A stretch of 63,243 nucleotides of DNA, filler included, from Hausera hauseri (taxonomy: Eukaryota), in the NCBI GenBank assembly GCA_046269625.1. It is 12 parts of 12 records of this genome, joined end to end, with 100 filler letters (N's around TTAATTAATTAA, not from the genome) between each part and the next. Parts side by side here need not be neighbours in the genome. Positions count along the whole stretch, not along the records: positions 18,804 to 23,933 come from JBJURY010325939.1; 11 more parts are not named here. One strand, given 5' to 3'. The notes below the pieces were generated by a model that was not told where the DNA came from, searched no databases, and was given only the letters and a program-made list of their open reading frames with translations. The position numbers were made by a program, and so were the translations under genes. Positions 18,704 to 52,868 of the stretch are shown in pieces. Numbering within the stretch: the first letter of the stretch is position 1; each line of letters opens with the position of its first letter.

Positions 18704-18849
18704 NNNNNNNNNNNNNNNNNNNNNNNNNNNNNNNNNNNNNNNNNNNNTTAATTAATTAANNNNNNNNNNNNNNNNNNNNNNNNNNNNNNNNNNNNNNNNN
18801 NNNTGCGCCTTGATGTGCTCTATCGATTAGCACTTTGTCCCGATCGATT

Positions 18850-18974
18850 CGATCAATAGTGCACTGTGCAGCGATCGATATGTGAAAAGTGCGAAAGTGC
18901 CCCTAGAAACGGTGCCTAGCGACACCGTTTCTAGGCACTTTTTGGATCGATTGTACAGTGCGCACTATCGATCG
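18850..18974. repeat. Long imperfect palindrome with a perfect 13-bp inner stem
   Basis: cctagaaacggtg (18902-18914) pairs with caccgtttctagg (18923-18935). Outer arms lie at 18850-18870 and 18952-18974. Confidence 0.8.
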
Positions 18975-21030
18975 GCACATGTGCAAAATCGATTTATTGA
19001 TTACCCTGGGGGGGGTTAAGGCAAAACCTCCATTTTCACACTACTACGATTTCCTGCAGCAGCATGTGACAGTTCTAAAACCCCCGTTTAAAAGCTTATA
19101 TCGCCAAATCCGAGAAAGCCTAAAAAACAAAACTTATGTAGAAAACGATAAAAAATGCAAAATACAAAATGGATTGAAATGGGGCTTAGAGAAAAATCGA
19201 CTAGTCCGATTATACGCAGTGCGAAGCTCAAAGGATGCACGAGCATACGTGTTGAGAGATATGATCCCATAGGAACCGACACATCAGCAAATGTACATAC
19301 ATGTCGCTGGTGAAGAAATACAATACAGGATCGTAGGACAATCCTAGAGTACTCAAAGGGGTCAACAATGGAAATTTAGTACAAATGAGCTATGTTGCTC
19401 TAGCCTCATGGATTACGCTTTTGAGTTTAGGATCGCAGAACTCGCGACTAAGCTTATATTTAAACTAACCTTACGAACAGAAGCGATGAGACCACTACCA
19501 TCTATACTATGTATACAGAAGCCCTGGAAAGACGAGATAGTACAGAATGGAGAATCATTCAGGCTAGTCCCAGATGGCAGGAATATTCGAATTTTAGCCG
19601 TAAACTATGGAGAAAAGGATGAAGGATGGTACACCCCGATCGAAGTCTCTATCCGAATTATAAATGGAGAAGAAATTAAATAAAATAATTGTATTTAGAA
19701 CTAAGATGAAATATACATTCCTTGACTTTACCGAAATCACAAAACTACAAAATTCAAAAAGACATAAGCCATTGCTTGTACGGATTTGTTATAGCCGGAT
19801 TTAGAGTACACGAAATGCCAGAAAGACTAGGAATTCGATAGGAATATATAGTCGGAATTCGTGAATTGAGACGCAATCCGACAGATATAAGCCGAATGGA
19901 AAGCACTCTAATGAGAAAAAGAGGATGACTACTTTCTTCAGCGTCACGATAATCGCAACTTAAGATGATGTTAGAAGCTATGAATGGCAAATAATTCAGA
20001 TTTCCCAAGTTGATGTTAGCGAGTCAGAAAACGAGACTTATAAGAGATATTTACATCTGGCTACGATGGGAACACGAGTGGAAACCCAGAAACCCTACAC
20101 AGAATGTCATGTCCGATAGCAACCCAAAAATTTTGATACAGAAATTCCGAAAAGGATTTAGTGAATACCCCACATGTAGACAAATTGAACCCCAAGGACA
20201 TAATAGTTTCCAAATAACCGTTCAAAACAGCCCGATCAAATTGTTCAAACAGAAAGGATTGAATAAAAATAATCAACAAACCTCATCGACCAGCCAGAAT
20301 CCAACTGAATGCGAGCCAATCTCCTAAAAAGCAACGGAAAGAATGAAATTGAACACCGGAGAACCTCAAAAAGGATAAAAAACAAAACTCTCCCTCCTCG
20401 AATATATCAGTAAAAAAAGTAAGACCAGTAATAACCATGCCGAAGAAATGAAATCGTCTACTAATAGCCTCACACCAATTAGTAAAGGAGAAATGACAAA
20501 CCCCAAGGATAAACCGAAAAGGCAGGAAGCCGAAAAATCCAATGAACAAAGAACGAAAACCTTCAGTTATGGACCACCCAGGACAGAAAAAAATGTTATT
20601 CGAAGAAACTGGGAAGAACCAGCCCCTATCATAGCAACAGAATTCGGTCAGGTTAAAGAATACACCATAATGCTTGTCATGGCCGAATATTATAGTAAAG
20701 GTAAAATTAAGGAAGCCATATTTTGTCTGCACTGTCCCCAGGAGAATTGTAAGTGGGAATGGATATGCCCGAGAAGACACAACAATTGGCAAATATTTAG
20801 CCTCGATATTTCAATCAAGAAAGGGAACCAAACGACCAAATACTCCAGTCGACACCCAAGTCAGAGTGCAGTTAAAGACACAATACAAGAAGACAGGGAT
20901 ACCCGATTTATACAAACAAAAAATCGTTGAAAGGACATTGGTAACCGTATCGGACGACCTCAAGAAAAGCTCCATAGACCCTAAACAAAAACGGTTATAC
21001 GGTTATTTATATTAAGACAGAAAGGGACTC

Positions 21031-21295
21031 GTGTTCGAACGAATTGAAGTAGACGAAAATCTTGTAGATATAGATGGAGGTGAAAAGGAAAAAAGCCCGG
21101 TTTGTGACGAAGACCTATACCAAGGAGTTGTAATGTTAGATAATAAGGATTTCACCCATAAATACTGTCGGTATTGCTTAGGAACGTGGACTATGAAAAT
21201 GGGAAGACGACTTGTCCAGTATGTAGGGCTGAAGCTACAAGACTAAGATACTTCTCTAATGGAGAAAGTAAGAAAATAGTGGAGATATTTCCTCC
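21031..21295 (+). pseudogene. RING finger protein, frameshifted
   Basis: SPVCDEDL...HKYCRYCLGTW, then after a frameshift TCPVCRAE. Confidence 0.7.
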
Positions 21296-21312
21296 AAAAC
21301 CTAATCTGGCAT

Positions 21313-21430
21313 TGTGGTGCCCACAACGGCTGGCGTTCTATGGCCCATTCGGTTGGGTATAGCCGGGCTTCCGCTGCCGGCACGTCGGGCACATAGACAG
21401 GCCCCGATTTTCTGCCTCGAAAACGGCACA
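21313..21430 (+). repeat. 118-bp GC-rich structured module, copy 1 (TGT...ACA)
   Basis: Ungapped alignment to 36800-36917 (94/118 identical by hand count), and alignment to 52759-52868. Confidence 0.85.
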
Positions 21431-21487
21431 ATACGATCGCACCAAGTTCAAAGCAAAAACTTACATATTATTTAAATATTCTTTGAA

Positions 21488-22015
21488 TTTCATGTTGCCA
21501 AAAATTTAGATGAAAGAAATGTTGTCGAATACCAGGTTCTAGCTGGTGGTCATTATGATGTCGATATTGTTATTAAAGATCCGGAAAACAATATTTTATA
21601 CAATCGAGAACGTAAACAGTACGAATCACATTCGTTTGTTCCATTGATAAATGGCATTCACCAAATCTGCTTCAGCAATGAATTTTCATCATTAACTCAC
21701 AAAACGGTTTATCTTGAATGGCAAACAGGTGACAGACAGAATTTGGGACTTGAGAAATCAAAATCTACAGCATTGACTTTCATGGAAACTAGTGCCATCA
21801 ATCTCCATGAAGCTCTAAATAGCGTCGAAGAAGAACAGACTCATATCCGCTTAAGGGAATCTTTCGGACGTTATTATGCCAAAGAATTAAATTCTCTAGT
21901 GACATACTGGTCTGTGGGACAGGCAATATTGACATTAGCTGTGGGTATTGGACAAGTGTTCATCTTGAAAAGCCTTTTCCATGACAAAAGACCAATTGCT
22001 TCTAGTTTTAAATGA
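21488..22015 (+). CDS. TMED7: 5'-truncated p24-gamma family protein (TMED7/TMED3-like), followed by a 3'UTR-like region
   Basis: EYQVLAGGHYDVDIVIKDP, CFSNEFSSLTHKTVY, ALTFMETSAINLHEAL, RLRESFGR and VTYWSVGQ...GQVFILKSLF. ATTAAA near 22312. Confidence 0.75.
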   Translation, partial: FHVAKNLDERNVVEYQVLAGGHYDVDIVIKDPENNILYNRERKQYESHSFVPLINGIHQICFSNEFSSLTHKTVYLEWQTGDRQNLGLEKSKSTALTFMETSAINLHEALNSVEEEQTHIRLRESFGRYYAKELNSLVTYWSVGQAILTLAVGIGQVFILKSLFHDKRPIASSFK

Positions 22016-22499
22016 CAGTCTATTCAAATGTCTATTAATCCAATATGTTACATCAGCAGTCCATATATATTTCCATTGTTTCGTGTTGAGCTGATTGATG
22101 GTTCTTCTTTTATTCTGTAAAATTTGCTGATTTCTCAAATTTATTTTTAATAATTTTGACACCGTCTATAGACTGTAAATTTCCACTCGTTGCATATGTG
22201 ATGTTTCGGTAAACGATGTAATAGTCATGGATTTTTTGAAATGGTCTTTGTTAATTTTTTATATAATGTATTGTTTTTGGCGACTCACGCAATATTTTAT
22301 GTGAAAATTTGATTAAATAATGTAAAGATAGTAGTTTAAAGTTGAAATTTTTTTATTTAAAAAATATAATTGATTTTGTCAACCATTTTATTTTTCAGAT
22401 TTCGAGTCTAATCTTTTAGAATTATGTTATATATATATATATATTCGGATATTTTTCGGCCAGATTAATAATAAAGATAACAGTACTTATGCAGTTTTT

Positions 22500-23933
22500 A
22501 CACTAAAGGCTTCTTTAACTTCCGAATCCAATCAATCAATCAATTTCCTCATTGACTCTGGAGCAGCAGTTTCTTTATTATCACCACTCATCAAAACACT
22601 ATCCACCTCTACATCTAACGCCAAATTGTGCACAGTTAATGGCCAAGTTTTACACATTTTCGACACGTCCAATGTTTCATTTACTTTATCACCATTCTCC
22701 GACATTTTCAATTGGACATTCATCGTTGCCGACACACAATCTCCAATACTTGGATCTAATTTCTTATCTTTCTACAACCTCTTTGTAGATTGTAGACAAC
22801 GTCGGATCATTAAAAGCTGTTCATCGAAGCCGACCCCTAAAATTAACCAACCAATGATGCAATCTATCTTGCCTAGAAAATCGATATTAAAAGAACCATC
22901 TGCAGACGCAAATAAGAAGATCATTAATACCAATATAAATAATCCAACGTTCTTGTTGCAGTCCGGTAATAGAGGAACAAAAAGCGTTGACAAGGACGAT
23001 TTAGGCGACTCGATTTCTACCGTTTCTCGCACTAAGTCAAATCAAATTACTGTCGTGACAACAACAACCTTTACTATGCTTAGCCAAGAAATGAGACAAT
23101 ATTTAGTCAAGTCTTTTTTCCATACAATTAAAAAACAGCCAGCATTTTGATCAACTAACACGATGTTTCATTATATCATCACAGAAAGCCTTAGGCCGTT
23201 AGGCAAAAACTCCGCCCACTTTCACCACGCCGTCGACAGGCAGTTTAAGCGGAATTCTCTGCACTCGAACAGGCTGGCATAATAAAACGTTCCAAAGTGC
23301 TTTTGGCATCACCACTTTACGTCGTCCTAAAAAATGGCACATTTTGTCCATGATGCGATTATCGCCAACTTAATAATGTCACTACCATGAACACTTATCC
23401 TCTACCTTTGATTAAGAACATATTATATTTCTTACACAAGTCTACGATTTATTCAACCACAGTTCTCGAAAAAGCCTATTACCAAATACCGGTAGCACCA
23501 GAAGACATCCCAAAAACAGCTATTATAACACCTTTAGGTCTTTTTGAATACGCATTCATGCCGTCCTGTTTAACGAACGCAGCACAAACTTTTCAACTGC
23601 ACATCGATTTAGTTCTTTCAGGCTTGCCATTTGTATATCCATACATTGATCACATACTAGTCGCATCGGCATCGCCCAAACAACACTAGGAAGATCGCAG
23701 ACTAGTTTTCCAACGCTTGCACAACTGCAATTTGCAAGTGAAGTTTTCTAAATGTCCCTTCGTTCAGAAAAAGGTAAATTTCCTTGGTTACGTCATCACA
23801 CCTGACGGTCACATTGCACAACCTGATAGAATTCATCAATTACAAAACATTGAGCTACCAAAAACTACTACTGATATGCGCAGGTTCCTTGGGACTTTAT
23901 ATTTTGTGCATAAATACGTCTCACACTGTAGCC
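22500..23933 (+). mobile_element. Decayed Ty3/Gypsy pol (protease + reverse transcriptase)
   Basis: FLIDSGAAVSLL, CDYRQLN, KAYYQIPVAPEDIPKTAIITPLGLFEY and YIDHILVAS (degenerate YxDD). Stops and frameshifts. Confidence 0.92.
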
Positions 23934-36799: not shown

Positions 36800-36917
36800 T
36801 GTGGTGCCCACATCGACCGCCGCCCTCTGGCCCATTCGGTTGGCCACGGCCGGGCTTGCGCTGCCGACGCGTCGGGCACATAGGCGGGCCCCGATCTTCC
36901 GCCTTGAAGGTTGTACA
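36800..36917 (+). repeat. 118-bp GC-rich structured module, copy 2 (TGT...ACA)
   Basis: Same length and ends as copy 1. The MSH4 fragment starts within 5 nt of its right end. Confidence 0.85.
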
Positions 36918-52758: not shown

Positions 52759-52868
52759 TGTGGTTCCCGCGTCCATCGTCGCCCTCCGGCCCATTCGGTT
52801 GGGCACGGCCGGGCGTCCGCTACCGGGCACATAGGCAGGCCCCAATTTTCTGCCTTGGAAACTAAAAT
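52759..52868 (+). repeat. GC-rich structured module, copy 3 (8-nt internal deletion, degenerate right end)
   Basis: Aligns to copies 1 and 2. Preceded by the purine tract agaaaaaggaagg. Confidence 0.85.

What the first reader, a model, noticed from the sequence alone, without database searches (positions are those of the whole stretch)
21313..21430. Recurrent 118-bp GC-rich, covarying structured module with TGT...ACA ends that borders gene fragments (copies 21313-21430, 36800-36917, 52759-52868)
Seen: three copies on three unrelated contigs. Copies 1 and 2 are both exactly 118 bp, ungapped and 94/118 identical. There is an invariant core GGCCCATTCGGTTGG, a long-range stem GTGCCC/GGGCAC, and an inner hairpin CGGTTG-N4-YRGCCG whose G-U pairs favour the plus strand. 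The 3' hairpin AGGCAG/CTGCCT becomes AGGCGG/CCGCCT in copy 2, a compensatory change. Right of each copy lies gene-like host sequence: TMED7-like after ~57 nt, MSH4 within 5 nt, and unknown coding then UBR5. The left flanks differ: RING cluster, C-rich noncoding DNA, and a possible integrase tail plus purine tract. No target-site duplications are visible. Inference: an undescribed very short LTR or terminal cis-element (structured RNA or ssDNA signal) of a mobile family, possibly associated with capture or shuffling of host gene pieces. This is the best candidate for a new system in the window.
Basis: partly seen in the sequence, partly recalled or inferred. Interest (0 to 1): 0.8.

Follow-up and report, generated by a model that had tools for sequence, protein, structure and literature searches.

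The report
Abundant short GC-rich interspersed repeat
The 118-base GC-rich block is one copy of a short repeat scattered through this animal-like genome, probably a leftover of a small mobile element, and nothing visible here shows that it is a functional folded RNA or that it captures host genes.

Summary
The block at 21313-21430 is real. It is the GC peak of the piece (62% against 38%), begins TGT and ends ACA. It holds the core GGCCCATTCGGTTGG, the GTGCCC/GGGCAC stem and the CGGTTG/TAGCCG hairpin.

In the one public run that holds the locus, contig depth reaches about 9,500 inside the block. It is 160-460 just to the left and 4-15 over the TMED-like ORF to the right. The bins fit a unit of about 118-128 bp. 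No high-depth head-to-tail joint was listed. So it is a discrete, dispersed, high-copy repeat.

Rfam gives no match even at E<=10, and ARAGORN finds no tRNA. The whole-module fold is ordinary (z -0.9). Only the 76-nt hairpin is mildly better than shuffles on the + strand (z -2.2). There is no second copy in the piece, no target-site duplication, no tail and no long inverted ends.

No other copy could be fetched, so covariation, LTR pairing and gene-fragment enrichment could not be tested.

Best reading: a remnant of a non-autonomous element, with a solo miniature LTR favoured. The neighbouring genes look incidental. Interest is low to moderate.

The parts
21313..21430 (+). The repeat unit (module). 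GC is 62% and the ends read TGTG...CACA. The depth bins allow the right edge to lie anywhere up to about 21440.
   Evidence: Sequence. GC maximum of the piece. Depth about 9,546 at 21420 against 160-460 to the left and 4-15 to the right, with bin means fitting edges near 21313 and 21430-21440.
21317..21392 (+). 76-nt irregular hairpin of 26 bp. It is closed by GTGCCC/GGGCAC and holds 5 G-U pairs, so it is 7 kcal/mol better on the + strand than on the - strand.
   Evidence: -37.7 kcal/mol and z -2.19 on +, -30.3 kcal/mol and z -1.32 on -. G-U pairs are listed.
21342..21356 (+). Core motif GGCCCATTCGGTTGG, which overlaps the 5' arm of the apical hairpin.
   Evidence: Its invariance among copies could not be checked.
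21350..21365 (+). Apical hairpin CGGTTG-GGTA-TAGCCG: 6 bp, of which 2 are G-U.
   Evidence: Taken alone it is not better than shuffles (z -0.86).
21404..21426 (+). Weak 3' hairpin CCGAUUUUC/GAAAACGG. The A4 run at 21417-21420 is one A shorter in about 65% of the family by depth.
   Evidence: z -0.43. One letter left out at 21420 in 11 contigs, depth 6,195 of 9,546.
21091..21312 (+). Context, left flank. A frameshifted RING-like cysteine/histidine pattern at the end of an A-rich moderately repeated region (19100-21312). Its frame runs into the module without a stop.
   Evidence: Three-frame translation. No Pfam family above threshold. Depth 75-2,700 and other copies about 85% alike.
21431..21475 (+). 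Context. A 45-nt AT-rich low-copy spacer that ends in an in-frame TAA at 21473-21475.
   Evidence: Depth 22.9 from 3 contigs at 21470.
21476..22015 (+). Context, right flank. An intronless TMED3/7-like (emp24/GOLD) ORF that lacks the signal peptide and the first conserved Cys. Depth is single-copy.
   Evidence: PF01105 at 1.2e-37, profile positions 23-181. Best relatives 50% identical. Homology starts at 21479-21488. Depth 4-15.

Best explanation
The block is one copy of a discrete, dispersed repeat of about 120 bp. The family is present at roughly hundreds to thousands of copies in the source genome, so this copy is the remnant of a short non-autonomous mobile element.

Within that, the most likely class is a solo LTR of a miniature (TRIM-like) LTR retrotransposon. 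Such an element is inserted by a retroviral-type integrase, which requires the TG...CA ends. It is later reduced to a single LTR by LTR-LTR recombination.

The RING-like sequence on the left and the TMED-like ORF on the right are simply what the copy landed next to, or what later rearranged around it. They were not captured by it. The hairpins are a property of a GC-rich sequence. At most they are a remnant of the element's own RNA biology, not an independent functional RNA.

Shown: existence, boundaries, abundance, dispersed (non-tandem) nature, and no match to any Rfam family. Inferred: the LTR class, the mechanism, and that the neighbours are incidental.
For: Depth is about 9,546 inside the block, 160-460 immediately to the left and 4-15 to the right. 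Bin means fit a unit of 118-128 bp. No high-depth head-to-tail joint appears among the best-supported joints.

The termini are TGT...ACA with a 4-nt inverted TGTG/CACA. LTRs of 120 bp exist in TRIMs, and many such families survive mainly as solo LTRs (PMC10886601). TRIM solo LTRs near genes are known in animals (PMC4558846).

There is no tRNA and no Rfam family even at E<=10 on 158 nt. There is no A-rich or simple-repeat tail and no long terminal inverted repeat, which argues against a SINE or MITE.

The TMED ORF is at single-copy depth with no poly(A) or direct repeats, which argues against capture. The same contig holds other abundant retroelement debris, including LTR-type protease and RT from 22461 on.
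Against: No TSD of 4 nt or more. No second copy within the 5.1-kb piece. No polypurine tract before the block and no primer-binding site after it. No TATA plus poly(A)-signal layout is obvious in 118 bp.

The summed contig depth is explicitly not a copy number. The single run may be the sample of origin, so it is not independent support.

The class assignment rests mainly on four terminal bases and on the size. No repeat library (Dfam or Repbase) could be consulted.
Confidence: 0.4

Rival explanations
1. The block is a retro-copy of an abundant, lineage-specific small RNA of about 118-125 nt. Some copies would be chimeras. In these a LINE reverse transcriptase, while copying an mRNA, switches template onto the small RNA. 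The product is small RNA followed by a 5'-truncated intronless mRNA copy, the U6/mRNA or WEIRD/MGL type of chimeric retrogene.
For: The unit is discrete and GC-rich in an AT-rich genome. The + strand hairpin is mildly better than chance and better than the - strand.

Downstream, in the same orientation, lies an intronless TMED-like ORF. It is cut off abruptly at its 5' end, with homology starting at 21479-21488, no splice acceptor there, and the N-terminal 35 or so residues absent from the piece.

Chimeras with an otherwise unknown small RNA are documented (PMC2104539; U6 in PMC4476161).
Against: About 45 nt of unrelated AT-rich sequence with a stop lies between the block and the TMED homology, whereas such chimeras are fused directly. 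There is no poly(A) tail after the TMED 3' region and no flanking direct repeat beyond chance: an 8-mer, matched by 82 of 500 shuffles.

No Rfam family matches. A T4 run sits inside the unit on both strands. No RNA run was available. Only one locus could be examined.
Confidence: 0.15
2. The block is a foldback or MITE-like non-autonomous DNA transposon, or the terminal repeat of a Pack-type DNA element that carries host fragments between its ends.
For: The first 81 nt form an imperfect palindrome: arms of about 20 nt, roughly 70% complementary, ending TGTG.../...CACA. The size and copy number are typical of MITEs. The unit lies at the border between a repeated flank and a single-copy gene-like flank.
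Against: The true terminal inverted repeat of the whole 118-bp unit is only 4 nt. No TSD of any length from 4 to 9 was found. The single-strand DNA fold is no better than shuffles (z -0.04). No inverted partner copy lies within the 2.5 kb downstream. MITEs are usually AT-rich.
Confidence: 0.12
3. The block is the conserved 3' terminal region of the moderately repeated RING-like element on its left. It would be over-represented because most copies are 5'-truncated, or because a shorter parasite shares the tail.
For: The block sits exactly where the left repeat ends and unique sequence begins. The left region is A-rich on the + strand like the sense strand of retroelements. Its last ORF runs into the block without a stop.
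Against: The depth step at 21313 is abrupt, 20-40 fold, not a gradient. No reverse transcriptase, endonuclease or any other domain is found in the 2.2 kb upstream. The 160-aa ORF there has no relative among 1.84 billion representatives and nothing in the Atlas.
Confidence: 0.1
4. The block is a functional structured RNA gene or self-cleaving ribozyme module, maintained by selection on its fold.
For: The + strand hairpin has five G-U pairs, and 6 of 200 shuffles fold as well. High GC and CpG content are retained in an AT-rich genome.
Against: No Rfam family matches, and no ribozyme family was among the results at E<=10. The whole-unit z-score is -0.9. CpG observed/expected is 1.0 across the whole piece, so CpG retention is not special. 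About a thousand dispersed copies are not how functional RNA genes usually look.
Confidence: 0.04

Closest known systems
[quoted passage not shown]
   Same: The ends are TG...CA. The size is within the known range (the Helenus-1_SMo LTR is 120 bp, PMC10886601). The family is high-copy and dispersed, mostly as isolated repeats that may sit next to genes (PMC4558846).
   Different: No paired copy, PBS, PPT or 4-5 bp TSD is seen here. No tRNA- or 5S-like pol III boxes are present, so it is not a Helenus/Cassandra/Ajax-type TRIMp3.
Chimeric retrogenes made by LINE template switching (U6-mRNA/L1 chimeras in mammals; WEIRD-MGL chimeras in Magnaporthe)
   Same: A small discrete RNA-sized unit lies upstream of, and in the same orientation as, a 5'-truncated intronless gene copy. 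The 5' partner may be an RNA of unknown function (PMC2104539).
   Different: The fusion is not direct (a gap of about 45 nt). There is no poly(A) tail and no flanking direct repeats. The small RNA is not identified and its expression is untested.
MITEs / foldback elements
   Same: Short, abundant and non-coding, with an internally palindromic 81-nt portion.
   Different: Terminal inverted repeats of only 4 nt, no TSD, and GC-rich.
SINEs
   Same: Short interspersed high-copy unit.
   Different: No tRNA, 5S or 7SL-related head. No A-rich or microsatellite tail and no TSD.

Membership tests
LTR retrotransposon LTR (solo LTR / TRIM) | 5'-TG...CA-3' termini with a short terminal inverted repeat | tested here: met
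   The ends read TGTG...CACA at 21313-21316 and 21427-21430. The boundaries are supported only to about +-10 nt by the depth bins.
LTR retrotransposon LTR (solo LTR / TRIM) | 4-6 bp target-site duplication flanking the LTR or element | tested here: not met
   No identical flanks of 4-9 nt with boundary slack of -5/+5 on the left and -4/+15 on the right. An old copy or inter-element recombination could erase it.
LTR retrotransposon LTR (solo LTR / TRIM) | Two direct copies enclosing a PBS (after the 5' LTR) and a PPT (before the 3' LTR) in at least some family members | not testable with these tools
   The piece holds only one copy. There is no PPT upstream and no TGG-type PBS downstream of this copy. 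TGGTGCCC at 21315-21322 lies inside the unit and is only an 8-nt resemblance to a tRNA 3' end. Other copies could not be fetched.
SINE | Head derived from a pol III small RNA (tRNA, 5S, 7SL) with internal promoter boxes | tested here: not met
   ARAGORN finds none. Rfam gives no match at E<=10 on 158 nt.
SINE | A-rich or simple-repeat 3' tail and a TSD | tested here: not met
   The sequence after 21430 is ATACGATCGCACC.... No TSD.
MITE | Terminal inverted repeats of about 10 nt or more plus a TSD of fixed length | tested here: not met
   Only 4 nt (6 nt if the flanking AT is added) are complementary at the ends of the 118-bp unit. No TSD.
Known structured RNA / ribozyme family (Rfam 15) | Match to a covariance model | tested here: not met
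   No matches at E<=1 on the piece and none at E<=10 on 21293-21450.
Conserved structured RNA (any) | Statistically supported covariation among copies | not testable with these tools
   Only one copy is visible.
Template-switch chimeric retrogene | Small RNA copy fused directly to a 5'-truncated transcript copy, ending in poly(A), the whole flanked by a TSD | tested here: not met
   The TMED copy is 5'-truncated and intronless. However, there is a 45-nt unrelated spacer, only an A6 run 344 nt after the stop, and no significant flanking repeat.

The most novel reading that the evidence does not exclude
The unit is the DNA copy of an undescribed, lineage-specific small structured RNA. Alternatively, it is the terminal module of an undescribed element. 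Either way it would repeatedly become joined, in one orientation, to 5'-truncated pieces of host genes. In that case it would be a marker of template switching or gene-fragment capture in this lineage.

The truncated TMED-like ORF 49 nt downstream is compatible with this.
Probability: 0.12. Interest if true: 0.6.

Novelty: new member of a known kind. Interest (0 to 1): 0.2.

Why it matters
If it is a solo miniature LTR or a similar remnant, it matters only for repeat annotation of a poorly sampled animal-like genome. It would be a family to add to that genome's repeat library, and a warning that GC-rich repeats imitate structured RNAs.

It would matter more if genome-wide data showed a consistent, oriented junction with truncated host genes. 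That would expose an active route of gene-fragment shuffling, and possibly a new abundant small RNA, in a lineage with no close sequenced relatives. The best TMED match is only 50% identical.

Tried and rejected
- **Rfam:** searched on the whole piece and on the module alone, with no match. The tRNA scan found nothing.
- **Second copy in the piece:** The repeat finder and sensitive blastn found none.
- **Public DNA collections:** pattern scans for other copies gave 2 hits in metagenome contigs. Both were chance matches in GC-rich contigs that align only over the 15-nt core. Viral contigs gave 0 and prokaryote genomes gave 0 twice. A scan for the hyper-abundant neighbouring repeat, used as an organism tag in viral contigs, gave 0.
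- **Protein route to other copies:** neither of the two open frames across the module shares words with any protein.
- **Sequencing runs:** only one run holds the locus, none is on record as RNA, and it is kept as contigs. Expression, RNA ends and per-copy alignments were therefore out of reach.
- **Literature:** a full-text search for the core motif found no paper.
- **Left-flank element:** Pfam, the Atlas and the exhaustive HMMER search all came back empty.
- **TMED N-terminus upstream:** the hit at 19779-19829 (E 0.04 for one of 38 queries) was rejected. It lies inside a stretch that another contig spans as a repeat.
- **PBS reading of TGGTGCCC at the 5' end:** rejected as weak. Beyond the 8 nt it does not fit the conserved T-arm positions of a tRNA (my own reading of the sequence).
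- **H/ACA snoRNA reading (3' ACA):** rejected. There is no ANANNA hinge box and the second hairpin is too short (my own reading of the sequence).

Full report
**Scope.** Two tools that could have fetched related genomic DNA or earlier notes were closed (look-up of encoding contigs; the search of earlier findings). This limited the work to one copy plus one read-laying run.

**What the piece is.** It is eukaryotic and animal-like, with 38% GC and CpG observed/expected of 1.0 throughout. From left to right it holds the following.
- 18804-19010: a palindromic, ATCGAT-rich repeat of extreme abundance, with summed contig depth 7.6e5.
- 19100-21312: an A-rich stretch of broken ORFs. It ends in a frameshifted cysteine/histidine pattern of RING type. 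Its depth is 75-2,700 and other copies are about 85% alike. It has no Pfam domain, nothing in the Atlas and no relative among 1.84 billion representative proteins.
- 21313-21430: the module.
- 21431-21475: 45 nt of AT-rich low-copy sequence ending in a stop.
- 21476-22015: an intronless TMED3/7-like ORF (PF01105, 1.2e-37, profile positions 23-181). Its best relatives are 50% identical. Its depth is single-copy, 4-15.
- 22016-22460: an AT-rich tract.
- From 22461 to the end of the piece: a degraded but very abundant LTR-type pol with no gag upstream. It carries an aspartic protease with DSG and an RVT_1 domain.

**Checking the observation.** The block is there and reads TGT...ACA. It is the GC maximum of the piece, 0.62 against a next best of 0.52. 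The core motif, the GTGCCC/GGGCAC stem and the CGGTTG-N4-TAGCCG hairpin are at the stated places. AGGCAG is the complement of CTGCCT on the other strand, not a second arm on the same strand. Only AGGC/GCCT (4 bp) can pair. The minimum-energy fold uses CCGAUUUUC/GAAAACGG instead. The claimed compensatory change therefore cannot be taken at face value.

**Is it recurrent?** No second copy exists in the piece. One public run (X1, kept as contigs, possibly the sample of origin) holds the locus. Laying its contigs at 80% or more likeness gave summed depths as follows.
- 459 for 21027-21197, and 261 and 160 at 21190 and 21194.
- 3,076 for 21198-21368 and 4,001 for 21369-21539.
- 9,546 at 21420 and 22.9 at 21470.
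- 4-15 across 21540-22394.

With a plateau of about 9,000-11,000, the two mixed bins fit a left edge near 21313 and a right edge at 21430-21440. The unit is thus about 118-128 bp, sharply bounded on both sides. It has roughly a thousand times the depth of the adjoining unique sequence. The tool warns that summed depth is not a copy number, so "hundreds to thousands of copies" is an inference.

The best-supported joints all have depths of 10-26, and none links the end of the unit back to its start. This argues against a tandem satellite. About 65% of the family by depth has one A fewer in the run at 21417-21420.

**Is it a structured RNA?** Rfam 15 gives nothing at E<=1 on the piece, and nothing at E<=10 on 158 nt around the module. 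ARAGORN finds no tRNA.

| Region folded | z-score |
|---|---|
| Whole unit, RNA, + strand | -0.9 |
| Whole unit, RNA, - strand | -1.1 |
| Whole unit, single-stranded DNA | -0.04 |
| 76-nt hairpin 21317-21392, + strand (-37.7 kcal/mol) | -2.19 (6 of 200 shuffles as good) |
| 76-nt hairpin 21317-21392, - strand (-30.3 kcal/mol) | -1.32 |
| Apical hairpin alone | -0.86 |
| 3' hairpin alone | -0.43 |

The 76-nt hairpin has five G-U pairs on the + strand. This gives a mild + strand preference, but the region was chosen after seeing the fold.

**Attempts to get more copies.** All failed.
- Pattern scans of metagenome contigs gave two chance hits that align only over the 15-nt core.
- Viral contigs and prokaryote genomes gave nothing.
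- Word searches with both open frames across the module gave nothing.
- A literature search for the core motif found no paper.

**What class of repeat?**
- **Against a SINE:** there is no pol III small-RNA head, no tail and no TSD.
- **Against a MITE:** only 4 nt are inverted at the ends, there is no TSD, and the unit is GC-rich. The first 81 nt are, however, an imperfect palindrome.
- **For an LTR:** the TG...CA ends with a short inverted repeat. The length is also within the documented range for miniature LTR elements (a 120-bp LTR in Helenus-1_SMo). Many such families persist mainly as solo LTRs (PMC10886601; an animal example near genes is PMC4558846).
- **Against an LTR:** no TSD, no PPT or PBS next to this copy, and no partner in the piece.

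I put the generic statement, a dispersed non-autonomous mobile-element remnant, at about 0.85. The solo-LTR sub-class stands at about 0.35-0.4.

**The neighbouring genes.** TMED homology begins abruptly at 21479-21488 at the motif that normally follows the first conserved Cys. An in-frame TAA sits at 21473-21475. There is no AG acceptor between 21455 and 21479. The N-terminal 35 or so residues are nowhere in the piece. So the gene copy is 5'-truncated and intronless.

That arrangement, a small discrete unit followed by a truncated intronless gene copy in the same orientation, resembles LINE template-switch chimeras (PMC2104539; PMC4476161). But several features do not fit.
- The junction is not direct; there are 45 nt of unrelated sequence.
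- There is no poly(A) tail, only ATTAAA at 22312 and an A6 run at 22359.
- The best direct repeat between the left flank and the region after the ORF is an 8-mer that 82 of 500 shuffles match.

The ORF is at single-copy depth with no second copy of 80% or more likeness in X1. For this one locus the capture or chimera reading is possible but unsupported. I keep it as the novel case at about 0.12.

**Verdict.** The block is a real, sharply bounded, abundant short repeat. Its class is unresolved, with a solo miniature LTR favoured. The claims of covarying structure and of gene-fragment capture are not supported by anything visible here, and one stem was mis-stated. Uncatalogued repeat families are expected in a genome with no close sequenced relative, so this is a new member of a known kind and of low to moderate interest.

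Noticed in passing
window 18804-19010: A palindromic, ATCGAT-rich MITE-like repeat. It has a perfect 13-nt hairpin (CCTAGAAACGGTG / CACCGTTTCTAGG) and several other inverted pairs. Summed contig depth is 7.6e5, about 80 times that of the module. It is probably the most abundant repeat of this genome. No match in viral contigs.
   Followed up: partly
window 21476-22015: A TMED3/7-like (emp24/GOLD) ORF of 179 intact codons, intronless and at single-copy depth. It lacks the signal peptide and the first Cys of the GOLD disulfide, with a stop just upstream and no acceptor site at the homology boundary. It is either a recently truncated gene copy or a gene with an unusual 5' structure. Its best relatives are only 50% identical, so the organism has no close relative in the protein collection.
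   Followed up: partly
window 19100-21312: An A-rich, moderately repeated region of broken ORFs. It carries a CCCH-like pattern (C-x7-C-x5-C-x3-H at about 20712-20770) and a frameshifted RING-like pattern (21091-21240). There is no Pfam family, no Atlas lead, and no relative among 1.84 billion representative proteins. It is an orphan multi-copy element or gene family.
   Followed up: partly
window 22461-23933: A degraded LTR-retrotransposon pol with no gag upstream in the piece. It has an aspartic protease with LIDSGA, and an RVT_1 domain interrupted by stops and frameshifts. It is very abundant (depth 4,500-65,000) and runs off the end of the piece.
   Followed up: partly
window 21470 and 21645: At unique positions every contig of run X1 differs from the window (A>G at 21470, T>C at 21645), and only 66% of the sampled words are held. 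The run is probably a different individual or strain from the assembly, or the assembly has errors here.
   Followed up: no
window 18804-23933: CpG observed/expected is 1.0 over the whole piece, and differences among repeat copies show balanced transitions. This points to no CpG depletion by methylation in this genome.
   Followed up: no
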